60,326 nt of DNA from Gekko japonicus (GCF_001447785.1 NW_015169926.1:23558-83883), one strand, 5' to 3'; counted from the first letter of the stretch, positions 2,146 through 53,650 are shown. Made by a program: numbers and translations. Notes: a model not told the origin generated them from the letters alone.

Positions 2146-3090
2146 TCATGGAGACATCAGAGCAGACATCTGAACTGGGGGACGCCCACCGTTCTCCTCC
2201 TCCTTGAAAACCCTCTGTAGTATCACCTTCAGACTCTCCCTAGTTCGACTCCTTTTCTTCCTCCCAATCAGGAAATAGATGACTGGGTTCACACTGCTGT
2301 TTATGGAGGTACAGAAGAAACCCCAGATGTACAGGTCACGATAGGCGGAAGAATAAAAGTAATTGAGGATGTAAATGACATTAAATGGAAAGGCAAAAAT
2401 CAGGAAGAAGAGGAGAGAAAGTGAGATGGCCACTAGAAGCTTTCCCCACTTGCGCCGTTGTGATTTAAAGTGGACTTTGATGAACAGAGCCAGAGTCGAG
2501 ATACTCAGAAGCGGGAGGCAAAGAAGGGCATTCATGAAAAAGCACAGCTCCCAATAATCGAACTCCAAATTCCAATGGAGAATGAAGGGGAGTTCACAGA
2601 CCAGTAAAGAGATGACCCATATAATAGTAGAGACAATGGTGGACAGGTGTGGTGGCTGATGGCATCGATGCCAAATTGGGAAGAAGACCAACACACATCT
2701 GTCAATGCCGATGACTGTAAGTAAAAATTGACCAGCAGTGTATGTGACATTGAAGAGCTCGTGGAAGAACCAAACCAAATGCTCAATGTGATATTTGAAG
2801 ACAATTGGAAGCAGATTTGTACCCAGTGCAGCTGTGAGCACACCAAAGTCAGCCACAGCCAAATTGAGAATGTAGGTGGTGAAAGAGCTCCTCTTAATGC
2901 AGAAGCCAAGAAGACAGATGATGATTCCGTTCCCCACAAGTCCCAAAATGCAGACAGAGATGACAATAATTTCTGGAGTATAGTCTCGCGTATACTCTGA
3001 ACGATTTGCGTACGTGGACATAGAATCATATCCCTCGTATTCTTCTCCAGTTTCCACAGTGGAGAGGGGCATCTGGCTTGAATTGCTCAT
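2146..3090 (-). CDS. Mas-related G-protein coupled receptor (MAS1/MRGPR family), paralog A, 314 aa, the most divergent copy
   Basis: 7TM ORF with GLVGNG (TM1), YILNLAVADF (TM2), IGIDRC..FFPIWHRCHQP (TM3/ICL2) and NSSVNPVIYFLIG (TM7). The track start at 3099 is TTG; the first ATG is at 3090. A polypyrimidine tract plus AG acceptor lies at 3145-3170 on the minus strand. Confidence 0.93.
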   Translation of the reverse strand: MSNSSQMPLSTVETGEEYEGYDSMSTYANRSEYTRDYTPEIIVISVCILGLVGNGIIICLLGFCIKRSSFTTYILNLAVADFGVLTAALGTNLLPIVFKYHIEHLVWFFHELFNVTYTAGQFLLTVIGIDRCVLVFFPIWHRCHQPPHLSTIVSTIIWVISLLVCELPFILHWNLEFDYWELCFFMNALLCLPLLSISTLALFIKVHFKSQRRKWGKLLVAISLSLLFFLIFAFPFNVIYILNYFYSSAYRDLYIWGFFCTSINSSVNPVIYFLIGRKKRSRTRESLKVILQRVFKEEENGGRPPVQMSALMSP

Positions 3091-3261
3091 TGTGCTCAAA
3101 CTCTCCTTCGGAGGCTCTTGTCTCCTCTCGTCCTCTATATACCCCTGATAGGGAAAAAGAAAGAGGGATGTTCTGTTACTCCTACAGAGTTAAACAAATG
3201 GCACAGCTGAAGTCCCCCCCTTGTGCATCTGATCTCAGATACTGAATCAGTTTGACAACTT

Positions 3262-12740: not shown

Positions 12741-13724
12741 TCACAACTGGGTTTCAACTCGGGTTCCATCCGTACAACTTTTTTCCTCTTTGAAAACCTT
12801 CTGGAGGATCATCTTCATGTTCTCCCTCTGTGTAGACTTCCATTGCCTCCCAACCAAGATATAAATAGCTGGGTTTACACTGCTATTTAAACAGGCAAAT
12901 AGCAGTGCACTGTCTGATGCGTATAATGGTAAGTGATTGAAAATACAGAGGATGAACATGACATTCAATGGAAAAGCAAAGAGGAGGAAGAAGAGAAGGG
13001 TGAGTAAGATGATGGTCAAAAGTTTCCCCCTCCGATGCTGTCGTGCTTTCAAACAGATTTTGATGAAGAGGGCCACAGTGGCAATCGTCATGACCGGGAG
13101 GCACAGCACAGCATTCACAATAAACTGAACACACCCTGCCATCTTTTCCCCCTCTAAATTAAGAAGCAGAAGAGTGTAGGTAACCGCGGTAAACAGGAAG
13201 GAGAGGACCCAAATCAGTGCACATACAATAGTAGACAAATGCGGTGGCCGGTGGCATCGATGCCAAAGTGGGAAGAAGACGGCCACACACCTGTCGATGC
13301 TGATAGCCGTCAGCAGAAATTGACTACTGCTGTATGTCGATAGGAATAGGAAAAAGAAGACAAAGAGTATAATGAGAGTATCATGAATAAATCCAACCCA
13401 AGAATAAACAACAAAAAATATAGCTGTTAGGAGGACCCCGAAATCAGCGACGGCCAAGTTCAAGATGTAGGTGCTGAAAGGATTCCTCTTAATACGGAAG
13501 CCGAGAAGCCAGATGACAATCCCGTTCCCCACGGCTCCAAGAATGCAGATGACCAATACGGAGATACGAATACCTACACTATCATCGATACTATTGTGGC
13601 TTTCAACATCAGTGGTATTACGAGATGAAATCTCTTCTGAAACGTTCCCATAATTGATACTGTCATTCGGGAGAAAAGAGTAAGTATAACTTGGGTGATC
13701 ATAATGATCCAGGGCAGCATCCAT
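12741..13724 (-). CDS. Mas-related GPCR, paralog B, 327 aa, intact
   Basis: GAVGNG, NLAVADFG, LLTAISIDRC, WHRCHRPPHLS, NSSVNPAIY. N-glycosylation sequons in the N-terminus, C-terminal ETQL, splice acceptor at 13810-13811. Confidence 0.95.
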   Translation of the reverse strand: MDAALDHYDHPSYTYSFLPNDSINYGNVSEEISSRNTTDVESHNSIDDSVGIRISVLVICILGAVGNGIVIWLLGFRIKRNPFSTYILNLAVADFGVLLTAIFFVVYSWVGFIHDTLIILFVFFFLFLSTYSSSQFLLTAISIDRCVAVFFPLWHRCHRPPHLSTIVCALIWVLSFLFTAVTYTLLLLNLEGEKMAGCVQFIVNAVLCLPVMTIATVALFIKICLKARQHRRGKLLTIILLTLLFFLLFAFPLNVMFILCIFNHLPLYASDSALLFACLNSSVNPAIYILVGRQWKSTQRENMKMILQKVFKEEKSCTDGTRVETQL

Positions 13725-18767: not shown

Positions 18768-19501
18768 TGTACTAATGTTAGAGAGAATTGTTATAAAATG
18801 ATGTATAGGTGGTACATGACTCTGAAAAAAATTGCAAATATGAACCAGAATATGTCAAACAAATGTTGGAAATGCAAGAGTCACGAGGGCTCATTTTACC
18901 ATATGTGGTGGACTTGCGAGAAAGCTGTAGACTTTTGGACAAAAGTCCACAAAGAAATGCAAAAAATATTGAAATGCTCTTTCAAAAAGGCACCAGAAAT
19001 TCTGCTTTTGGGATTGAAAATGGAAGAAATCAATACGACTAAAAAGACCTTATTCTGGTACTTAATTACAACAGCGAGAATGATTTATGCACAATTTTGG
19101 AAAACAGAGAAAGTGCCAGAAATCGAAGACTGGATACAAAAAGTTCTGTTCATGGCAGAAATGGATAAAATTATGAAAAAGTGGAATAACAAAGAAGATG
19201 ACGTGTTTTTTCAAGAATGGAGTGACTTTAAAATATATCTGGAAAAGAACTGGGATGTGAAACAAAACTTAATATGTTTAGATCAATATTAAGTCAAATG
19301 ATGTTATCTTGAGATTGTAATGATAAGAAAATGATATAATTAATGATGTAAAGTAATGTGGAGTAGGGGGGGAAGCATTGCGGGAAGCCACTGGAGGGAG
19401 GGGAGGAAATGGGAATGGGGTAGACAATGGAAAGGATGAAATGGTTTAATTCTAAATGTTGAATTCCTAAGAAAATAAAATTTGTTTACCAAAAAAAAAA
19501 A
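18768..19501 (+). mobile_element. L1 lineage B, 5'-truncated, 17-bp TSD
   Basis: TSD AAGAA(C/G)CACATGTTAGC at 18751-18767 and 19502-19518; AATAAA plus polyA; the empty site is visible at ~20518-20547. Confidence 0.92.
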
Positions 19502-19531
19502 AAGAAGCACATGTTAGCCATTGTGGAGCAG

Positions 19532-26272: not shown

Positions 26273-27241
26273 TCATAACTGGGTTTCAGCTGGGGTTTCC
26301 TCAGTACAGCTTTCTTCCTCCTTGAAAATCTTCTGGAAGACCACCTTTATGCTCTCCTTCTGCCTAGACTTCCATTGTCTCCCAACCAGGATATAAATAG
26401 CTGGGTTTACACTGCTATTTAAACAGGCTAATATTATTGCAACATCTGGTAAGTCCGGTGGTATGTAATTGAAAATATCGAGGATGGCTGTGACATTCAA
26501 CGGAAAAGCAAAGAGGAGGAAGAAGAGAAGGGTGAGCAAGATGATGGTCAAAAGCTTCCCCCTCCGATGTTGTCGTGCTTTCAAACAGACTTTGATGACG
26601 AGGGACACGGTGGCAATCGTCATGACCGGGAGGCACAGCACGGCGTTCACAATAAACTGGTAACACGCTGCCATCTTTTTTTCTTCTAAATTAAGAAACA
26701 GAAGAGTGTAGGTAACCGCGGTAAACAGGAAGGAGAGGACCCAAATTAGTGCACATACAATAGTGGACAAATGTGGTGGCCGGTGGCATCGATGCCACAG
26801 TGGGAAGAAGACGGCCACACACCTGTTGATGCTGATAGCCGTCAGGAGAAATTGACTACTGCTGTACATCGATAGGAAAAGGAACATGAACACTAAGAAC
26901 ATAAGGGGGAAAATATGAAGATATACAATCCACAGATAAGCAACAATAAATGGAACTGAGAGGAGGACCCCTAAATCAGCGATGGCCAAGTTCAGGATGT
27001 AGGTGCTGAAAGGATTCCTCCTAATGTGGAAGCCAAGAAGCCAGATGACAATGCCATTCCCCACGGCTCCGAAAATGCAGATGATAATAACTACGCTATC
27101 ATTGATTCTTGTTTCTCTTTCATAATCATTGGTATTATTAGATAAAATCTCTTTTGAAACATTCTCATAGCTGATACTGTCATTTGGGAAGGAAGAGTAA
27201 GTATAAATCGGGTTATCAAAATGATCCAGGGCAGCATCCAT
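26273..27241 (-). CDS. Mas-related GPCR, paralog C, 322 aa, intact (NRC instead of DRC)
   Basis: Same motifs as paralog B; acceptor at 27324-27325. Confidence 0.95.
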   Translation of the reverse strand: MDAALDHFDNPIYTYSSFPNDSISYENVSKEILSNNTNDYERETRINDSVVIIICIFGAVGNGIVIWLLGFHIRRNPFSTYILNLAIADLGVLLSVPFIVAYLWIVYLHIFPLMFLVFMFLFLSMYSSSQFLLTAISINRCVAVFFPLWHRCHRPPHLSTIVCALIWVLSFLFTAVTYTLLFLNLEEKKMAACYQFIVNAVLCLPVMTIATVSLVIKVCLKARQHRRGKLLTIILLTLLFFLLFAFPLNVTAILDIFNYIPPDLPDVAIILACLNSSVNPAIYILVGRQWKSRQKESIKVVFQKIFKEEESCTEETPAETQL

Positions 27242-35874: not shown

Positions 35875-36456
35875 GGAAGGTTTATTTTACCATATGTGGT
35901 GGACATGCGAAAAAGCTGTGGACTTCTGGACCAGGGTCCACAGCCAAATGCAAAAGATTCTGAAATGTTCCTTTAAGAAAGCACCAGAAATTCTGCTCTT
36001 AGGACTTAAAATGGAAGAACTGAATATTACAAAAAGGACTCTATTTTGGTATCTGATTACAACGGCGAGACTACTCTATGCACAATGTTGGAAACAAGAA
36101 AGAATTCCAGAGTTAGAAGAATGGATACAAAAAACTTTGTTTATGGCGGAGATGGAAAAAAATTACAAAAAAAATTGAATAACAAAGAAGATCAGGAATT
36201 CTATGAAGAGTGGAGAGACTTTAAGGTTTACCTAGAAAAGAACTGGGATGTGAAACATAACTTACTATATTTGGAACAATATTGAAATAAGAATAGGATG
36301 TTATCTTAAGCTGTGCTGGAGGGACGAGGGGGGAAGCATTGCGGGAAGCCAGCGGGAGGGAGATATTGGTATGGGGTTAAAACTGAAATATTAACTTGAA
36401 CTGATGATAGGTCAATATTTTCATGAAAATAAAACTGTGTTAAAAAAAAGGGGAAA
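35875..36456 (+). mobile_element. L1 lineage B-related, 5'-truncated, 19-bp TSD
   Basis: TSD AAAGATCCCTTCGACTCCC at 35856-35874 and 36457-36475; FYHMWWTC motif; one frameshift in an A-run. Confidence 0.92.
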
Positions 36457-38469: not shown

Positions 38470-39550
38470 GAGAAATACCGGACATGCAACCGTTGGATGG
38501 ATTCATGGTTGGTTGAAAAATTGTACCCAACGAGTGCTCAAAAATGGCTCTGCATCTACGTGGAGGGAAGTCTCAAGGGGAGCGCCCCAGGGCTCGGTCC
38601 TAGGCCCGGTGTTGTTCAATGTTTTTATAAATGACATGGAGGAAGACATAGAGGGGATGCTTATCAAATCTGCAGATGACACGTAGCTAGGTGGGATTGC
38701 TGATTCTGAAGAAGACACAGAGTCAGGATTCAAAATGATCTAGATAGGCTAGAACAGTGGGCTGAGACAATTAAAATGAATTTCAATAGAGATAAGTGCA
38801 AAGTCCTGCACAGATATAGAATGGGAGGGACTTGGCTTGAAAGCAGCACAAGTGAAAGGGATCTAGGTGTTCTGGTTGATCACAAGCTAAACATGAGCCT
38901 GCAGTGCGATGTGGCTGCGAAGAAAGCTAATGCAATCTTAGGATGCATTAACAGAAGCGTTGTGTCCAGATGACGGGAGGTGGTAGTTCCGCTCTATTCT
39001 GCTCTGGTCAGGCCTCACCTGGAGTACTGTGTCCAGTTTTGGGCACCACATTTTAGGAAGGATGTTGACAAGCTCGAGTGTGTCCAAAAGAGTGCAACCA
39101 GGATAGTGAGAGGGTTGGAATCCAAGTCTTATGAGGAAAGGCTGAAAGAGTTGGGTCTGTTTAGCCTGGGAAAGAGAAGGCTTAGAGGGGACATGATTGC
39201 AGTCTTCAAGTATTTGAAGGGCTGTCATGTAGAAGATGGAGCAGATAGATTCTCTCTTGCTCCGGATTGCAAGACTAGATCTAATGGGTGGAAAGGACAA
39301 GGGAGTCGTTACCGGCTAAATATCAGGAGAAACTTCCTAACTGTAAGAGTGGTTGAGCAGTGGAACAGTCTGTCTCGGGAGGTGGTGGATGCTCCTTCGC
39401 TGGACGTTTTCAAGTGGAGGCTGGACGACCATCTTTCAGGTATGTTGTAGGCATGTAGGGCTATCTTTCAGCTATGCTCCTGCAGAGTGCAGGGGGTTGG
39501 ACTAGATGACCTGCAAGGTCCCTTCGAACTCTAACGTTCTATGATTCAAT
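38470..39550 (+). mobile_element. CR1 LINE 3' portion (degenerate RT and 3' end)
   Basis: [49 protein letters not shown], and the GGGTTGGACTAGATGACC..TTCTATGATTC terminus. Confidence 0.92.
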
Positions 39551-40211: not shown

Positions 40212-41022
40212 TTGTTGTTCAGTCGCACAGTCGAGTCCGACTCTTCGCGACCCCATGGACCATCTCCCGCCAGGCTCTCCTGTCTTCCGCCGTCCTCTGA
40301 AGTTGGCTCAATTTCATGTTCGTTGCATCGATGACACTGTCTAACCATCTCATCCTTTGCCGTCCCCGTCTTCTTTGACCTTCAATCTTTCCCAGCATCA
40401 GGGTCTTTTCCAGTGAGTGCTCCCTTCTCATTTGGTGGCCAAAGTATTTGAGCTTCAGTTTCATTATCTGGCCTTCCAGGGAACAGTCAGGGTTGATTTC
40501 TTTGAGGATTGACTGATTTGTTCTTCTTGCAGTCCAAGGGACTCTCAAGAGTCCTCCAGCACCATAGTTCAAAAGAATCTATTCTTCGGCGCTCGGCCTT
40601 CCTTATAGTCCAACTCTCGCAGCCATACATGACTACTGGGAATACCATTGCTTTGACCATGCAGACTTTTGTTGGCAGGGTGATGTCTCTACTTTTTATC
40701 ATGCTGTTTAGGTTCGCCATCGCTTTCCTCCCAATGAGCAGGCGTCTTTTAATTTCATGGCTGCAAGTCTGTGGTGATCTGGGATCCCAGGAACGTGAAG
40801 TCTGTCACTACTTCCACGACTTCCCCTTCTATTTGCCAAGGAGTGATGGGGCCGGATGCCATGATCTTAGTTTTTTTGATGTTGAGCTTCAAGCCCACTT
40901 TTGCACTCTCCTCTTTTACTCTGAGCAAGAGGCTCTTTAGATCCTCTTCACTTTCAGCCATTAGAGTGGTATCATCTGCATATCTGAGGTTGTTGATCTT
41001 TTCCCCAGCAATCTTAATTCCC
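40212..41022 (-). mobile_element. RTE-BovB LINE 3' portion, nested in a CR1 3' end
   Basis: NLRYADDTTL, GLKLNIKKTKIM, VFPVVMYGCESW, LEKTLMLGKIEG, (CAA) tail. GCATG is duplicated at 40207-40211 and 41023-41027, and the CR1 sequence resumes across the insertion. Confidence 0.92.
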
Positions 41023-42238: not shown

Positions 42239-43020
42239 TCATGGTGTGAGCATTTCACTTCCATGTTGCCAGTTAAGCAATGGATGGCCAATGGGTATGT
42301 GCTTAGGGCATCAGTTTGTCTTAATCTGGCCCTGGGGGTGTTGTATCCCTGGTCGTGCAGAGCAAAACTGCCAAAGAAGGGAGTGCTGTGATGATTCCTT
42401 TCAGGGGTGCTGGCTCACTTGTTCTGGCTTGGTGGGAGGATCATCTCTGGATTCCAGTTTTTTTATGGCAGGGGAGAAGGATTACAAAAGAGCACTCATG
42501 TCTTTATAAGGCCATTCTTCTCAGTTGCAGTGGTGTTATGCCTTTCCAAAGGATATTGGGGGGCTATCTAGAGACAAAGAATTCATTTTAAAACTTTTAT
42601 ACAGAATCTGTCATAACCCTACGTGTTTTCCATATGTGCCATAGAATTCTAACGGAATCTGCCTGGGACAAAGGAAGACACTTTTGCCGGTTGGAATGGG
42701 CATTATAACTGGGTTTCAACTGGGGTTTCCTCAGTGCAGCTTTCTTCCTCCTTGAAAACCTTCTGGAAGGCCATCTTCATGCTCTCCCTCTGTCTAGACT
42801 TCCCTTGTCTCCCAACCAGGATATAAATAGCTGGGTTTACACTGCTATTTAAACAGGCTAATATCATTGCAACATCTGATAAGTCCGGTGGTATGTAATT
42901 GAAAATGGAGAGGATGACTGTGACATTCAATGGAAAAGCAAAGAAGAGGAGGAAGAGAAGAGTGAGCAAGATGATGGTCAAAAGCTTCCCCCTCCGATGC
43001 TGTCGTGCTTTCAAACTGAC

Positions 43021-43681
43021 TTTTTTTTAAAAAAATTATTTTTTCAATTTTTAACAATTCTAACACTTCAAACAGTGAACAATTAATTTTCCAATTACAT
43101 TCACATCCTGTAAATAGTTCCTGCGTATGTACAACGTTATAACATGTTCAAAGAATTACAATACATTACTCATCACACTTCCGAATATGTTTTCAGTAGA
43201 AAGATAACAGACTTAGCGTAAACTTGATAGGAACATTAGGAAGCAATCCGAACTATTGGAGCGGTAAGAAAGAGAAGAAAGAAAAGGAAATATTAGAGCT
43301 AGTGGAGAAGATATAAGTAAGTAAGTATGAGATCTTGCGGAACTGGTCATTGCATTAATCTTATATCCATTTGTGATATTGAGACCAATCAGATGAGATA
43401 AATTGTTTTTGTGACAGATAATCCAGCACTGGGTACCATTTCTCTATGAAATTAGACTTTATTGGGTTTTGTGACATGCAATTAAGTTTGTTGGAGACTG
43501 CATCCATTAAGTAATGAGTCCAAAGTTTCTTATACCATATTTCTACTGAGGGTGCCTCTTTCTCCTTCCAGTACAATGCTATTGCTGTTTTGGCTGCATC
43601 TAGAAGGACTTCTATTGTGCGTCTATGTACCCTTGAATTCAGATTTTCAGGCCAGATATTCAAAAACAAAATTTCCGGTTT
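43021..43681 (-). mobile_element. L1 3' end (ORF2 C-terminus, 3' UTR, A-rich tail), likely the continuation of lineage A
   Basis: KPEILFL..AAKTAIALYWK..PSVEIW..W* (stop at 43361), then a UTR and a T-run at 43021-43028 on the + strand. Confidence 0.88.
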
Positions 43682-43794
43682 TATCCACAAATCAACAGCT
43701 ATAAATGTAACTGAGAGAAGGACCCCCAAATCAGCGATGGCCAAGTTCAGGATGAAGGTGCTGACCCAGAAAAAGAAGTAGCTTTTCTGTTTGA

Positions 43795-46470
43795 ATGTGC
43801 ATAACTTCCTGTTTGGTTACACCCCTTCCAACACAATGGTGATAGGGTCGGAGCTATATGGGAAAGTCTGAGTGGAGTGATATACCACCTTGACATTATT
43901 TTGAGATTTTGTATTCTGACAGATATTACTTTTGTTTTGAAGCTTGATGAGTTCCATATGCGTTCCCACGTTTCGTCCGTGAGATTTTCTGTAATGTCTC
44001 TTTTCCACGCATTTTGATATGGTAGCTGTTTAGAGCATGATTTTTTAATTAACAGAGAATATATTTTTGAAATAAGGCCTTTGTTTTGTGCATCTGAATC
44101 TCTTATCAAGATTTCCATTTCTGTTTGAGCTTGGGACATTGTAGCTTTTATATTTAATTTGTTAAGCAGGTGTCTTAACTGCAAATACAAGTACCATTGT
44201 ATGGGAGAGCCTAGCTTTCGTTCAAGGTCAAGTTTACTTATGATACCGTTGTTATCAGCTATATCCCCTATCCGAGTAAGGCGTTTAAGTCTCCATTTTG
44301 CTGAAAGCATGGAGTCTGATCCAGGTGGAAATGATTTCTGGTTTAGAAACGTGTAGTATCGTGATACTGGGGGCAAAGAATGTCTAGCATGGTTCTTCCA
44401 ACATTGGAATGCTGGGAGTATGGTTTCAATAGCATTCCTCTCCGTAGCGGAAAGCTTCTCTTTGGCCCAGAGTGCACTATCTAGATACTTTGGAAATATC
44501 AAATCATCCCCTATATTCACCCACAGAGGTCTTACAGTAGTGTGTAACATTTTAACCGCTGTAGCTAACAAGATTGCTCTGTGATAAAATGCTATATCCG
44601 GGAGAGCAAAGCCCCCTAGATTTTTTGGCCTTCGTAAAATTGAGAAGCTTATTCTAGGTTTCTTTTTATTCCACAAGAAATTTTTTAAAGAAGATTGCCA
44701 TTTTTTGAGCATCGCATTTGGGATACTAAGAGGGATTGTTCTGAATAAAAAAATAAACTTTGGTAAGATAAAGGATTTAATTAAGTTATATTTTTCAAAC
44801 CAGTTAAGGTGTAATTTACTCCATTTATTCATCTTTTGAGTTATTTCCGCATGCATAGTCAAGTAATTTAGTGAAAACATTTTAGAGCTATCCAGGCTAA
44901 TCTTGATACCTAAATATTGCATCTCTGTGGTCGTCCAATTAAACTCAAATGTCTCCCTTATGAAGTTTTCTTCCATGCTATTTAGATGAATTGGCATCAG
45001 TTGTGACTTAGAGTCATTAATCTTTAATCCCGAAAATAAACCAAATTGATTTAAGAGCTCTTGCAGGGCAGGTAGAGACACTATGGGGTTTGTTAAGAAG
45101 AGCACCATATCATCTGCAAATAAAGCAATTTTATGTTCCTGTGTGCGTACTTTGATACCAGCAATGTCCGGATGTGCTCTTATGGCATTGGCCAGTGGCT
45201 CAAGCGATAACGCAAATAGGATGGGGGATAATGGACACCCCTGCCGAGTACCACGTAAAAGTGGGATGGGTTTGGAGCACATTCCATTAACTTTAATTCT
45301 AGTAATGGGAGAAGCATACAATGTTTTAATAGTAGACAAAAATCTCTGTCCAAACCCCATTGTTTCTAACACAGAAAAAAGATATGGGAACTCAACCGAA
45401 TCAAACGCCTTTTCCACATCAAGTGATAGAAAGGCCATATTAAGTTTGTTCCTTTGGGAATGACGAAGTAAGGACATCGTTTTGATAGTGTTGTCTGCCA
45501 AATCCCTACCAGGGATAAAACCGACCTGATCCTTTTTAATATATCTAGCTATAAATGTGTTTATTCTCTTGGCCAGAGCTGCCGTTAAAATTTTAAAATC
45601 TTGGTTAAGGAGGGAGATGGGTCGATAGGATGCCGGATCCAAAGGATCCCTATTCTTTTTTAGAATTACAACTGTGTGAGCTTCACGCCACGAAGGTGGA
45701 AAGTATCCTGAAGTCAGAACCTCATTACATGCTTCAGTCAGATGAGGCACTAGAGATTTTGCAAACATTTTATAGAACTCTGATGTGTACCCATCAGGGC
45801 CCGGGGTCTTCATAGGTTTTAATGATTTTATAACCTCCATAATTTCTTCATTAGTAAAAGGTTCTTCTAACAATAGCTTATGGCTCTCTTCCAATCTGGG
45901 CACTATGTCTTTGCCTTTTAGAAAAGAAATCATCCGTTCATGGTCTAGTGGACAGGAAGTGTATAATTTTTTATAGTATTCTTCAAAAACATCAGATATA
46001 GAATCATTGTTATTAAAAACGTCTCCATTCCGACTTTTTATAGCAGAGATCCTATTAGCTGACTTCAGGGCTTTCGTCTTATGGGATAGTAATTTCAAAA
46101 ATTTTGGTGATCTAAACCAATATTTTTGTTTGGTATAAATAAGCTGCGTCTTGATTTTATTTGATTCCAATTGTTCTAATTTTCTGCGCTCTGTCAAGAG
46201 CTGTTTGTATATCTTTTTACAAGGTTTCTCTTTATGTTGTGTTTCTAACATTTTTATTTTGTCAAGTAGTTCTGATTCAACTTTTTGTCTTTGTTTCTTC
46301 TGATAGGAAGACTTCGAGATTAGATTTCCCCTAAGCGTTGGTTTAAGTGCGTCCCATCTCATGTGTGGTCGAATTGATTCCTGCGAGTTTTCCTTAAAAT
46401 ATTGCAATATATCCTGATCAATTTCCTGTCGTGCGATTGGATCCATTAATAAAGAGTTGTTGAGTGTCCA
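43795..46470 (-). mobile_element. L1 LINE lineage A, ORF2 (RT plus part of the C-terminal Cys-rich domain), 5'-truncated, no endonuclease domain
   Basis: Uninterrupted frame: WTLNNSLL, KTPGPDGYTSEFYK, SYRPISLLNQDFKIL, SLDVEKAFD, RGTRQGCPLSP, LFADD, YLGI, CWKGC..H. Confidence 0.95.
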
Positions 46471-47459
46471 GTGTCCAGATTTATGATCTTTTTAGATCTG
46501 ACAAAAAAAACTATGGTTTTAGAGAGGAAAAAAATGAAATTGAAAAGGTTTGGGAGAGTGGAGGAGGAAAAAATATTTCTAAAATGTATAAGGTGTTGTT
46601 AAAATGGTATACTGAAGATGAAACTGTTAAAGAACAAATGTTAAAATGGGCTATTAATATGAATAAGGAAGTGGCTATGGAAACCTGGGAATATTTGTGG
46701 AAAAATTCTATTAAGATCTCGACATGTACTAATGTTAAAGAAAATTGTTATAAGATGATGTATAGGTGGTACATGACACCTAAGAAGATTGCAAATATGA
46801 ATCAAAATATGTCAAACAAATGTTGGAAATGTAAGAGGCATGAGGGCTCATTTTATCATATGTGGTGGACTTGTGAGAAAGCTGTAGACTTTTGGACAAA
46901 AGTCCACAATGAAATGCAAAAAATACTGAAATGTTCTTTTAAAAAAGCACCGGAAATTCTGCTTTTGGGACTCAAAATGGAAGAAGTCAATACGACTAAA
47001 AAAACTTTACTCTGGTACCTGATAGTGACAGCGAGAATGATTTATGCTCAGTTTTGGAAGACGGAAAAGGTACCAGAGGTTGAAGAATGGATACAAAAAG
47101 TTCTGTTCATGGCACAAATGGATAAGATTACAAAAAAACTGAATAACAAAGAAGACGATGAGTTTTTTGGAGAATGGAATGATTTTAAAATTTATCTGGA
47201 AAAGAACTGGGATGTGAAACAAAACTTAATATGTTTAGATCAATATTAAGTCAAACGATGTTATCTTTAGATTGTAATGATGAAAAACTGATATTGTTGA
47301 TGATATGAAGTAATTTGGAGCAGGGGTGGAAGCATTGTGGGAAGCCATTGGAGGGAGGGGAGGAACTGGGAATGGGGTAGACAATTGATAGAATGAAATG
47401 ATTTAATTTTATATGTTTTATTCCTGAAAAAAAAAAATTTTTTTACCAAAAAAAAAAAA
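46471..47459 (+). mobile_element. L1 LINE lineage B, 3' end with polyA
   Basis: ORF with KMMYRWYMTP and CWKC..EGSFYHMWWTC, stop at 47249, G-rich 3' UTR, polyA to 47460. Very similar to the copy at 18768-19501. Confidence 0.92.
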
Positions 47460-48108
47460 AGGATGAAGGTGCTGAAAGGATTCCTCTTAATGCGGAAGCC
47501 AAGAAGCCAGATGACAATCCCATTCCCCACAGCTCCAAAAACACAGATTAACAAAATGGGTATAGTAATAACTACATCATCGACGATGCTCTTTTCTCTT
47601 CTGTAATCAGAGGTATTATGAGATGAAATATCTCCTGAAACATTCTCATCATTGATACTGTCATTTGGGAAAGAAGAGTAAGTATAATTAGGATCATCAT
47701 CATAATCCAGGGCAGCGTCCATAATGGGTTGTCAGGCTGGTATTGGTTATGATGCTCAATTGCTTCTTTCGGGATTTTGGTCCTGACTTGTCTTTACATT
47801 TCTGTTAGGAGAAAGGAAACAATGGATGATTCAATTCTTGTTTTGAAAATGCATGTCTAAAAGTTTGAGGATGGGATTGCAGAAGTTTTCAGCCTTGTGT
47901 TCCTCAATCCATTTCAAAATGGGTTGTGGTTGCTCCATTGTGGCTCCCGTCTTATGGGACTGCCTGCCTAAGAAGTTCAGGAGGGCTTCCAGTGTCCTAG
48001 TTTTCCACCAACTATACAAAATGGAATTATTCCAGAAGTTAATCGGCTTGCACTGTACAAAATGGTTTACAAACGTACTTGGAGAAATGATTAGGGACTG
48101 TTGTCTAT

Positions 48109-52647: not shown

Positions 52648-53650
52648 TCATAACTGGGTTTCAACTGGAGCTTCCTCAAGGCAGCCTTCTTCCTCCTTGA
52701 AAACCTTCTGGAAGATCATCTTCATGCTCTCCCTCTGTCTAGACCTCCATTGTCTGCCAACCAGGATATAAATAGCTGGGTTTACACTGCTATTTAAACA
52801 GGCTAATACTATTGCTCCATCTGTTACGTATTCTGATAAGTCAGTGAAAATGTCGACGATGTATTTGACATTCAATGGAAAAGCAAAGAGGAGGAAGAAG
52901 AGAAGAGTGAGCAAGACGATGGTCAAAAGCTTCCCCCTCCGATGCTGTTTTGTTTTCAAACAGACTTTGATGAAGAGGGCCCCAGTGGCAATCATCATGA
53001 CCGGGAGGCACAGCAGGGCATTTGCAATAAACTGGTAGTATTCTTCCATGCTCACTGTTTCATTTAAATAAATAAATACGAGAGTGTAGGTGATTGTAGT
53101 AAGCAGGAAGGAGAGAACCCAAATTAGTGCACATACGATGGCGGACAAATGTGGTGGCCGGTGGCATCGGTGCCAAAGTGGGAAGAAGACGGCCACACAC
53201 CTGTCAATGCTGATAGCCGTCAGGAGAAATTGACTAGTGCTGTACGTTGATAGGAATAGGAACAAGAACACTAGGTATGTAATCTTATTTACATAAAAAT
53301 AATAATACCTAAATGCTGTCCTCATATCAAAAACAATAAATGGAACCGATAGAAGGACTCCCAGATCAGCGACGGCCAAGTTCAGGATGAAGGTGCTGAA
53401 AGGATTCCTCTTAATGCGGAAGCCGAGAAGCCAGATGACAATCCCGTTCCCCACGGCTCCGAAAATGCAGATGACCAATACGGAGATATGAATACCTACA
53501 CTATTATCAATACTATTGTGGCTTCCATAATCAGTGGTATTATGAGATGAAATCTCTTCTGAAACATTCCCATAATTGATACTGTCATATGGGAAAGAAG
53601 AGTAAGTATAACTTGGGTCATCATAATGATCATTAGTTATGATGCTCAGT
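52648..53650 (-). pseudogene. Mas-related GPCR paralog E: full 7TM frame open but start codon deleted
   Basis: The frame is open from ~53650 to the stop at 52648. Relative to paralog B, the 40 bp equivalent to 13710-13749 (containing the ATG) is absent at 53631/53632. The track start at 53478 is TTG; the first in-frame ATG lies after TM2. Confidence 0.75.

What the first reader, a model, noticed from the sequence alone, without database searches (positions are those of the whole stretch)
43021..47475. Double-tailed, head-to-head chimera of two different L1 lineages inserted into an MRGPR gene
Seen: the insert has an A-rich tail at both ends pointing outward (T-run at 43021 for minus-strand L1-A, polyA at 47460 for plus-strand L1-B). 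The two 5'-truncated ends meet at 46464-46477 across a GTGTCCA-GTGTCCA tandem. Both halves encode the ORF2 C-terminal Cys-rich region with very different sequences (RWYITP..CWKGCNQTGSYAH vs RWYMTP..CWKCKRHEGSFYH). Established: classical twin priming inverts the 5' part of a single RNA, gives non-overlapping halves and leaves one tail. Inference: two different L1 RNAs primed opposite strands at one locus and their cDNAs were joined 5'-to-5' ('two-template twin priming'). The ~890-codon stop-free L1-A frame suggests a recent event.
Basis: partly seen in the sequence, partly recalled or inferred. Interest (0 to 1): 0.8.

Follow-up and report, generated by a model that had tools for sequence, protein, structure and literature searches.

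The report
Nested L1 insertions breaking a receptor gene
A lizard-type Mas-related receptor gene was destroyed by two young L1 retrotransposons of unlike lineages, and the structure fits one ordinary insertion followed by a second, messy one that deleted DNA, not a new "two-template twin priming" event.

Summary
There are outward A-tails at 43024 and 47460, two L1 lineages head to head (27% aa identity in their overlap), an open ~890-codon frame, and a broken Mas-related GPCR gene.

The span is not one double-tailed insert, however. From left to right it holds:
- 43024-43683: an L1 3' end (L1-C, minus strand)
- 43684-43764: 81 bp of the host gene (TM2)
- 43765-43793: 29 nt of sense L1-B-like RT-domain sequence
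- 43794-46475: L1-A (minus strand)
- 46476-47460: L1-B (plus strand, with poly(A))

A perfect 15-bp target-site duplication (43750-43764 and 47461-47475) encloses only the stub + L1-A + L1-B. The GTGTCCA tandem is L1-A coding sequence, and the A|B joint is blunt at 46475|46476.

L1-A and L1-C share lineage and strand, and only ~84 nt of L1 separates them.

Best reading (0.5):
- A 5'-truncated L1-B inserted normally.
- One L1-A-lineage retrotransposition then started at a CTTT/GA nick. Its cDNA was interrupted by a 110-nt island of target DNA, and it ended inside L1-B. It deleted 334 bp of gene and ~1.1 kb of L1-B.

Each ingredient is already described for human L1. No read evidence spanning the unique junctions was obtained. 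The same scan's note s1-833056 flags the island on this window.

The parts
42703..43023 (-). 3' part of the broken Mas-related GPCR gene (ICL3, TM6, TM7, C-terminus, stop codon)
   Evidence: 90-92% identical to the paralogs at 26470-26593, 12938-13061 and 52845-52968. The frame is open, KVSLKARQHRRGKLL...ETQL*.
43024..43683 (-). L1-C: 5'-truncated 3' end of an L1 of the L1-A lineage. It holds the last ~107 ORF2 codons from (L)KPEILFLN, the 3' UTR and the A-tail (T-run on the + strand at 43024-43050).
   Evidence: ORF. It is 30% aa identical to the L1-B C-terminus. Its best hits among 120 ORF2 proteins are P0002 and P0001, the same two as for L1-A. Family contigs run on from 43683 into ...YDITSVQIPL(KPEIL). 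The tail meets the gene at CTTT/GA.
43684..43764 (-). Island, part 1: 81 bp of the host gene (TM2, STFILNLAIADLGVLLSVTFIAVDLW). The left TSD copy at 43750-43764 is included.
   Evidence: blastn gives 89% identity to paralog 26928-27009 and 86% to 53319-53399. Alignment A1. The 15-mer is identical to 47461-47475.
43765..43793 (+). Island, part 2: 29-nt sense-strand stub of an abundant L1-B-like element (RT domain, ..HPEKEVAFLF.. just upstream of the DAEKAFD motif). This is the likely 5' end of the resident L1-B insertion.
   Evidence: In raw reads X15, 131 reads run on leftwards from 43764 and 92 run on rightwards from 43793 into L1 RT-domain sequence. The context peptide's best hit is P0043, E 5e-9, which is also the best hit of L1-B.
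43794..46475 (-). L1-A: 2682 nt of ORF2 without stops, from ..TGHWTLNNSLL (just after the endonuclease domain) to ..CWKGCNQTGSYAH. It has no EN domain, no 3' end and no tail.
   Evidence: Pfam RVT_1, E 1e-39. It aligns to P0001 aa 273-1156 at 38%. Family contigs differ from it by 0-2 letters per kb.
46476..47460 (+). L1-B: the last 257 ORF2 codons, the 3' UTR and a 13-nt poly(A) of a different, high-copy L1 lineage
   Evidence: 88% identical to the copy at 18768-19504. 237 reads of the family run on upstream of 46476. 46% aa identical to the Anolis L1 protein P0043.
47461..47475 (.). Right copy of the 15-bp target-site duplication GGATGAAGGTGCTGA
   Evidence: Paralog coordinates 26994-27009 are matched by both 43749-43764 and 47460-47475.
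47461..47722 (-). 5' part of the broken GPCR gene (start codon, N-terminus, TM1, ICL1 up to ..RNPFSTFI)

Best explanation
The locus records two successive L1 events in one paralog of a tandem Mas-related GPCR cluster.

Event 1 was an ordinary endonuclease-dependent target-primed insertion of an L1-B element on the plus strand. The element was 5'-truncated in the RT domain and would originally have been about 2.1-2.3 kb. It made the 15-bp target-site duplication.

Event 2 was one retrotransposition of an L1-A-lineage RNA on the minus strand.
1. It was primed on its poly(A) at a CTTT/GA nick in the gene, 415 bp from the L1-B insertion site.
2. After 660 nt (L1-C), the new strand continues with 110 nt of the pre-existing target: 81 nt of gene, including one TSD copy, plus the first 29 nt of resident L1-B.
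3. It then resumes on L1-A RNA about 84 nt further upstream and runs 2.68 kb (L1-A).
4. It is joined blunt to the interior of L1-B.
5. The target DNA on either side of the island was lost: 334 bp of the gene and about 1.1 kb of L1-B.

What is shown: the parts, their borders, the TSD, the deletion size and the lineage assignments. What is inferred: the order of events, and that L1-C and L1-A come from one RNA.

The island could arise in two ways, and the data do not separate them. The growing cDNA may have switched from RNA to target DNA and back. Alternatively, a second 3'-OH on the same strand may have primed the same RNA.
For: 1. Alignment to the paralogs shows 81 bp of gene between L1-C and L1-A, exactly 334 bp of gene missing, and 15-16 bp present twice.
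2. The TSD-bounded unit starts with sense L1-B-like sequence and ends with the L1-B poly(A), which is the outline of a normal 5'-truncated L1-B insertion. Another L1-B copy in the window, at 18768-19504, also has a 15-bp TSD.
3. L1-A and L1-C have the same strand and the same closest relatives, P0001 and P0002. In L1 coordinates they are separated by only 29 codons.
4. Read depth falls smoothly from 64 at the L1-C tail, through 21 at the L1-A 3' end, to about 1 at its 5' end. That is the pattern of one family with 5' truncation.
5. Differences private to this copy are about 0.3% in both pieces: 2 in 660 nt and 7 in 2682 nt.
6. If the pieces were independent, I estimate that the same lineage, the same strand and ends within 85 nt in the right order would coincide in well under 1% of cases. 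This is my own estimate, not a tool result.
7. The L1-C tail abuts a T-rich EN-like site and has no TSD, as expected for an insertion with a target deletion.
8. The junctions have 0-1 nt of microhomology, which fits end-joining.
9. Patches templated from target DNA under 250 bp inside L1 inserts, and L1 insertion-mediated deletions, are documented for human L1.
Against: - No read or contig that spans the unique junctions (43683|84, 43764|65, 43793|94, 46475|76, 47460|61) was shown. The single read-laying run listed only the best-supported rows, so the assembly itself remains the only witness.
- No allele or orthologous locus with L1-B alone was seen.
- That the 29-nt stub belongs to the same family as L1-B rests on clade similarity and abundance. 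No full-length L1-B copy was available to check it.
- The stub could instead be a short captured cDNA piece.
- Nothing explains why the cDNA would skip 84 nt of RNA and take up 110 nt of DNA.
- L1-B does not look measurably older than L1-A. All pieces are about 0.3% from their family majority, so the order of events rests on topology only.
Confidence: 0.5

Rival explanations
1. Homology-tethered repair. L1-C is an older, independent 5'-truncated insertion that made the 334-bp deletion. Later a break arose at or inside L1-B, 110 nt away. An L1-A-lineage RNA base-paired to the exposed antisense strand of resident L1-C. The unpaired 110-nt DNA flap then primed reverse transcription on that RNA a short way upstream, which gave L1-A.
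For: This explains the same lineage, the same strand and the near-abutment, with 84 nt of RNA against a 110-nt flap. L1-C on its own has all the marks of a standard insertion with target deletion: an EN-like site, a tail, and 1 nt of microhomology at its 5' joint.
Against: No precedent was found in the papers read. It needs long resection and internal priming from an unpaired flap. The private divergence of L1-C and L1-A is the same (about 0.3%), which gives no sign of an age difference.
Confidence: 0.12
2. During L1-B integration, the reciprocal DNA end (the left TSD copy) was extended by reverse transcription on a different RNA, L1-A. This is twin priming with two templates. The 29-nt stub is a short extra cDNA piece caught at the joint. 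L1-C is an unrelated earlier or later insertion.
For: The TSD is preserved, and the arm next to the 5' TSD is inverted with its 3'-most position at the TSD, as in twin priming. Inserts with two oppositely oriented pieces from different RNAs, and extra cDNA pieces at internal joints, were seen in human cells. Two L1 lineages are both young here.
Against: The stub is sense on the strand of the reciprocal end, so reverse transcription of L1-B RNA from that end cannot make it. The model leaves the match of lineage, strand and coordinate between L1-A and L1-C to chance, which I estimate at under 1%. The supposed joint signature is L1-A's own sequence, and the joint is blunt.
Confidence: 0.15
3. Retrotransposition of a pre-existing composite. 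Somewhere else an L1-B element already carried an antisense L1-A fragment. Its transcript was mobilised in trans and 5'-truncated 29 nt before the L1-A joint. It inserted with a 15-bp TSD next to an unrelated L1-C.
For: It explains the TSD, the poly(A), the stub and both internal joints with one standard event.
Against: It needs truncation only 29 nt from the internal joint. It also leaves the L1-A/L1-C coincidence unexplained. Read depth over the 5' kilobase of L1-A is about single copy in X15 (0.7-2.8), so few if any further copies of that end exist.
Confidence: 0.08
4. Assembly artefact: reads of near-identical young L1 copies were joined wrongly.
For: L1-A, L1-B and L1-C all have near-identical copies elsewhere (0-2 differences per kb for L1-A). 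No junction-spanning read was displayed.
Against: A misjoin would not create a perfect 15-bp TSD, a gene island in register with the paralogs, or an exact 334-bp gap in gene coordinates. Two samples of the species hold 74-80% of the sampled words of the stretch. There are no N runs in 42.7-47.8 kb.
Confidence: 0.07

Closest known systems
L1 insertion-mediated deletion (Gilbert et al. 2002; Symer et al. 2002; Han et al. 2005, recalled from memory; term and PCAWG examples in PMC7058536, listed)
   Same: The L1-A-lineage insertion starts with a poly(A) at an EN-like T-rich site, has no TSD, and replaces target DNA (334 bp of gene plus about 1.1 kb of resident L1-B).
   Different: The inserted cDNA is split in two by a 110-nt island of the target that survived the deletion. 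The far end lies inside another young L1 of a different lineage.
Templated insertions / chimeric L1s by an SDSA-like step (Gilbert et al. 2005, cited in PMC8087252; 22 cases in bioRxiv 10.1101/2024.08.27.596794; 3 cases in PMC11702581)
   Same: A short stretch (<250 bp) of genomic DNA from beside the integration site sits inside the L1 sequence.
   Different: In the reported human cases the template lies within about 15 bp of the insertion site and ends up duplicated. Here it lies 334 bp away and is not duplicated, apart from the older 15-bp TSD, because its original surroundings were deleted. The patch replaces about 84 nt of L1 almost length for length.
Twin priming (Ostertag and Kazazian 2001) and its two-RNA form (PMC11702581 section 7)
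   Same: A TSD-bounded unit holds an inverted arm next to the 5' TSD and a direct arm ending in poly(A).
   Different: The arms come from lineages only 27% identical and overlap by about 135 codons in L1 coordinates. A sense-strand stub of the direct arm's family lies between the TSD and the inverted arm, which twin priming does not produce.
Double-tailed L1 bridges from two synchronous insertions (bioRxiv 10.1101/2024.08.27.596794, section 9)
   Same: Two 5'-truncated L1s lie in inverted orientation, each with its own outward poly(A), and host DNA between the two priming sites is lost.
   Different: Those are somatic events in human tumours that bridge distant breaks and are bounded by heteroduplications. 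Here one element has a normal TSD of its own, and gene DNA remains between the parts.
Endonuclease-independent L1 insertion at breaks (Morrish et al. 2002, recalled from memory; Sen et al. 2007, PMC1920257)
   Same: Taken alone, the L1-A piece lacks a tail and a TSD, is 3'-truncated, and comes with a target deletion.
   Different: A matching 3' end with a tail and an EN-like site lies 110 nt away on the same strand. The L1-A lineage insertion as a whole therefore looks EN-dependent.

Membership tests
L1 (LINE-1) clade retrotransposon fragments | ORF2 with a reverse-transcriptase domain and a C-terminal Cys-rich CX3C..H..C region | tested here: met
   L1-A matches RVT_1 at E 1e-39 and has 1987 ORF2 relatives carrying PF00078 and PF03372. 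The CWKGC..H and CWKCK..H motifs align with those of P0001, P0002 and P0043.
L1 (LINE-1) clade retrotransposon fragments | 3' poly(A) tail and target-site duplication of roughly 7-20 bp | tested here: met
   L1-B has a 13-nt poly(A) and a perfect 15-bp TSD. L1-C has an A-tail but no TSD; it has a deletion instead.
Classical twin priming (one RNA, 5' inversion) | The inverted and direct arms are adjacent, non-overlapping (within a few bp) parts of the same element | tested here: not met
   The arms overlap by about 135 codons in L1 coordinates and are 27% identical at the aa level, with no blastn match.
Classical twin priming (one RNA, 5' inversion) | The inverted arm abuts the 5' TSD copy directly | tested here: not met
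   29 nt of sense L1-B-like sequence lie between the TSD and L1-A.
   The left tail's element is interrupted by 110 nt of target DNA. L1-B has its own 15-bp TSD and 5' stub.
L1 insertion-mediated deletion | Poly(A) at an EN-like site, no TSD, and loss of target DNA relative to the empty site | tested here: inconclusive
   The tail lies at CTTT/GA, and 334 bp of gene are missing relative to three paralogs. The true empty site (an allele or ortholog) was not available, so the paralogs stand in for it.
Mas-related G-protein-coupled receptor (host gene) | Rhodopsin-type 7TM protein whose closest characterised relatives are MAS1 and the MRGPRs | tested here: met
   The intact paralog at 26276-27241 matches 7tm_1 at E 6e-23. 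Its best solved chains are MAS1 (3e-48), MRGPRD, MRGPRE, and MRGPRX1, X4 and X2. The broken copy's three pieces are 82-92% identical to the paralogs.

The most novel reading that the evidence does not exclude
A single L1 cDNA alternated between its RNA template and the target DNA (RNA, then 110 nt of DNA, then the RNA again 84 nt upstream). Alternatively, a resident L1 copy recruited RNA of its own lineage to a nearby break and a DNA flap primed on it. Either way, an island of host DNA was left inside one retrotransposition product. If another note on this genome (s1-818648, a near length-neutral swap inside an L1 ORF2) reflects the same process, squamate L1 reverse transcriptases may make such length-matched template-switch patches repeatedly.
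Probability: 0.2. Interest if true: 0.5.

Novelty: new member of a known kind. Interest (0 to 1): 0.3.

Why it matters
The locus is a clean natural germline example, outside mammals, of several L1 integration side-products that are mostly known from human cell culture and tumours. These are target deletion, a patch of target DNA inside the insert, and nesting of two co-active divergent lineages. It also shows how a tandem receptor gene family loses a member.

For the scan, the lesson is that outward tails on both sides do not make a single event. Alignment to paralogs, and read run-ons at each border, were what resolved the structure.

The near length-matched island that replaces about 84 nt of L1 is the one feature without a ready explanation. 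It would be worth a genome-wide search.

Tried and rejected
1. I first read the locus as two unrelated events: L1-C with a deletion, and a two-RNA twin-primed A/B composite. I dropped this once L1-A and L1-C proved to share lineage, strand and almost adjacent L1 coordinates, and once the 30-nt 'filler' proved to be sense L1-B-like sequence.
2. I considered that the 30 nt after GSYAH might be L1-A's own continuation (..RKATSF..). I rejected this because 131 and 92 reads of a high-copy element are flush with its two ends.
3. Two word-index protein searches, meant to find close full-length copies of L1-A and L1-B, gave only distant relatives (best 38-45% and 63% identity). No family reference could be obtained that way.
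4. The stub and its run-on sequence have no other copy in the window.
6. Read laying (one call allowed) listed no junction-spanning pieces among the rows shown. This is neither support nor refutation.
7. A words search of the scan's findings for similar L1 chimeras found none holding all the words.
8. Gilbert et al. 2005 (PMC1190285) is not held in the library.
Full report
**What is there**

The window carries a tandem cluster of Mas-related GPCR genes on the minus strand. Intact paralogs lie at 2146-3099, 12741-13724 and 26273-27241, and another paralog at 52648-53478 whose listed ORF (276 aa) begins inside TM1. The paralog at 26276-27241 matches Pfam 7tm_1. Its closest solved relatives are MAS1, MRGPRD, MRGPRE and MRGPRX1, X4 and X2.

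The finding concerns a fifth copy that is broken. A blastn of 42900-47600 against the window, together with alignments to the paralogs, places three pieces of this gene:

| Window position | Matches paralog coordinates |
|---|---|
| 42703-43023 | 26273-26593 |
| 43684-43764 | 26928-27009 |
| 47461-47722 | 26994-27241 |

Two things follow.
- Paralog coordinates 26594-26927, which are 334 bp, have no counterpart in the broken copy.
- Paralog coordinates 26994-27009 are represented twice. The duplicated 15-mer GGATGAAGGTGCTGA is identical at 43750-43764 and 47461-47475.

The span reported as one insert is therefore interrupted by 81 bp of host gene. A target-site duplication (TSD) encloses only its right-hand 3.7 kb.

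**The L1 pieces**

*L1-A (43794-46475, minus strand).* This is 2682 nt of ORF2 without a stop. It matches RVT_1 at E 1e-39 and aligns to aa 273-1156 of its best full-length relative, P0001, at 38%. It begins just after the endonuclease domain (..TGHWTLNNSLL) and ends at ..CWKGCNQTGSYAH.

*L1-B (46476-47460, plus strand).* This is the last 257 ORF2 codons, a 3' UTR and a 13-nt poly(A). It is 88% identical to another copy at 18768-19504, which has its own 15-bp TSD with one mismatch. L1-A and L1-B overlap by about 135 codons of ORF2. They are 27% identical there and share no blastn match.

*L1-C (43024-43683, minus strand).* This is the last ~107 ORF2 codons from (L)KPEILFLN, a 3' UTR and the A-tail that forms the T-run at 43024-43050. 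The tail merges with the gene at a T-rich, endonuclease-like site, CTTT/GA on the primed strand.

**What the reads add**

Contigs of three runs and raw reads of a fourth were laid on 42850-47650 at 92% likeness.

1. *The 30-nt 'filler' is L1-B-like.* In the raw reads, 131 reads match from 43764 rightwards and run on to the left. Another 92 match up to 43793 and run on to the right. Joined with the window's letters, the run-ons read MDAIEYYEKHPEKEVAFLFVDAEKAFD on the plus strand, which is the RT-domain segment just before the conserved D-A-E-K-A-F-D motif. Among the 120 ORF2 proteins collected, this peptide's only good hit is P0043, an Anolis L1 (59%, E 5e-9). P0043 is also the best relative of L1-B. 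So 43765-43793 is a sense-strand stub of a high-copy, L1-B-like element. It is not filler, and it is not L1-A.
2. *The A|B joint is blunt.* 237 reads of the L1-B family match from 46476 and run on upstream (..EYEWLKYM-QIYDLF). Contigs of other L1-A copies, a 2245-nt one in X1 and a 340-nt one in X11, match through 46475 and then run on into unlike sequence. The joint is therefore at 46475|46476. The GTGTCCA-GTGTCCA tandem belongs to L1-A, where it encodes T-G-H-W-T.
3. *L1-C starts at 43683.* Contigs of the L1-C family run on from 43683 into ..YDITSVQIPL, in register with P0001's IRDISGVCIPKT. L1-C shares 1 nt with the gene at that joint.
4. *Depth falls smoothly from L1-C into L1-A.* Unique flanks in the raw reads have a depth of about 1-2. 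Depth is 64 at the L1-C tail, 37 at its 5' end, 21 at the L1-A 3' end, and about 1 near 46.3 kb. L1-B stands at 160-730.
5. *All pieces are young.* L1-A differs from family contigs by 0-2 letters per kb. Differences private to this copy come to about 0.3% in each of L1-A, L1-C and L1-B.

**L1-A and L1-C belong together**

- Their best relatives among the 120 proteins are the same two, P0001 and P0002. For L1-C the E-values are 1e-15 and 3e-11, against 3e-7 for the next hit.
- They lie on the same strand.
- In a mafft alignment, L1-A ends at the H of GSYAH (P0001 GNYIH) and L1-C starts at KPE (P0001 TPE). Only 29 codons, about 84 nt, of L1 are missing between them.
- In place of those 84 nt stand 110 nt: the 81-nt gene piece and the 29-nt L1-B stub.
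- If the two pieces were independent, I estimate the joint chance of the same lineage, the same strand and ends within 85 nt in the right order at well below 1%. This is an inference, not a computed statistic.

**Reading**

The unit enclosed by the TSD begins with sense L1-B-like sequence and ends with the L1-B poly(A). That is the outline of an ordinary 5'-truncated L1-B insertion of about 2.1-2.3 kb. By the positions on P0043 (aa ~517 to ~884), its middle ~1.1 kb is now replaced by antisense L1-A.

The 110-nt island is exactly what lay to the left of that insertion's interior: gene, then TSD, then the first 29 nt of L1-B. It is one contiguous piece of the pre-existing allele.

The simplest history is therefore this.
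1. L1-B inserted first.
2. One L1-A-lineage RNA was then reverse-transcribed from a CTTT/GA nick at 43023|43024.
3. After 660 nt the new strand carries the 110-nt island.
4. It resumes on the RNA 84 nt upstream and continues for 2.68 kb.
5. It is end-joined inside L1-B.
6. The target DNA on both sides of the island is lost (334 bp and ~1.1 kb).

I cannot tell how the island arose. The cDNA may have switched from RNA to DNA and back, or a second 3'-OH on the same strand may have primed the same RNA. I put 0.5 on this history.

**Rivals**

- *Tether model (0.12).* L1-C is older, and it recruited L1-A RNA to a nearby break by base pairing.
- *Corrected first-reader model (0.15).* Twin priming used two RNAs and the stub is a captured cDNA scrap. 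It fails to explain the link between L1-A and L1-C. It also needs a sense-strand stub on the reciprocal end, which reverse transcription of L1-B RNA from that end cannot give.
- *Pre-existing composite (0.08).* A composite RNA from a source locus elsewhere was mobilised.
- *Misassembly (0.07).* The exact TSD and the in-register gene island argue against it.

The remaining ~0.08 is left to readings I have not thought of.

**Comparison with what is known**

- Non-mammalian vertebrates carry many concurrently active L1 lineages (PMC5381506 and PMC3787681, abstracts), so two lineages at one site is expected.
- L1 insertion-mediated deletions are well established (PMC7058536 and PMC1920257, listed).
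- Patches templated from nearby genomic DNA under 250 bp inside L1 inserts were counted 22 times in ten tumours and attributed to an SDSA-like step (bioRxiv 10.1101/2024.08.27.596794). Three more were seen in an inducible-L1 cell system (PMC11702581). A de novo germline chimeric L1 of this kind is described in PMC8087252.
Oppositely oriented pieces from two different RNAs were attributed to ligation of opposite DNA ends extended on different templates. Bridges of two inverted 5'-truncated L1s, each with its own poly(dA), have also been reported.

**Limits**

- Only one read-laying run was allowed, and its output showed no piece spanning the unique junctions. The assembly therefore stands unverified at those points.
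- No close full-length L1-A or L1-B copy could be fetched, so the family of the stub rests on clade similarity and abundance.

**Verdict**

The locus is a nested, deletion-associated L1 rearrangement of known kinds with one odd feature, the length-matched island of target DNA inside the L1-A lineage insertion. Interest is 0.3.

Noticed in passing
window 2146-3099, 12741-13724, 26273-27241, 52648-53478 (all minus strand): There are four further paralogs of the Mas-related GPCR in tandem, in the same orientation. Three are full-length open frames of 317-327 aa. The listed ORF of the fourth (276 aa) starts inside TM1. The cluster is evidently expanding and decaying.
   Followed up: partly
window 18768-19504 (+): This is a second 5'-truncated L1-B copy, 88% identical to 46725-47461. 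It has a poly(A) and a 15-bp TSD with one mismatch (GAAcCACATGTTAGC / GAAgCACATGTTAGC). An N run starts 29 nt after it.
   Followed up: partly
window 35876-36310 (+): This is an older relative of L1-B, 78% identical over 435 nt. Its ORF2 C-terminal frame has decayed.
   Followed up: no
window 38980-39450 (+) and 40219-40572 (-): These ORFs have the look of C-terminal ends of other LINE clades. The first resembles CR1 (..VQFWAPHFRKDVDKLECVQK..). The second resembles RTE/BovB (..KLKYFGHQMRREHSLEKTLMLGKIEGQRRRGRQRMRWLD..). I recognised them by eye only. They fit a squamate genome.
   Followed up: no
window 43765-43793: The 29-nt L1-B stub is partly self-complementary (CAGAAAAG..CTTTTCTG). This is a property of the L1-B RT-domain sequence itself, not of the joint.
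   Followed up: partly
runs X10-X14; X11: Small runs (97-251 million letters) that lack the unique flanks still hold 38-55% of the stretch's sampled words. In X11, L1-B word depth is in the thousands, L1-C is 44-200 and L1-A is 2-8. These may be RNA or reduced-representation libraries. If they are RNA, all three L1 families are transcribed.
   Followed up: no
window 43334, 43484, 44251, 44975, 45150, 47418: At these positions the window's letter is absent, or nearly so, from all laid reads of the family. They are private substitutions of this copy, about 0.3% in each L1 piece, and could serve as markers to genotype the locus.
   Followed up: partly
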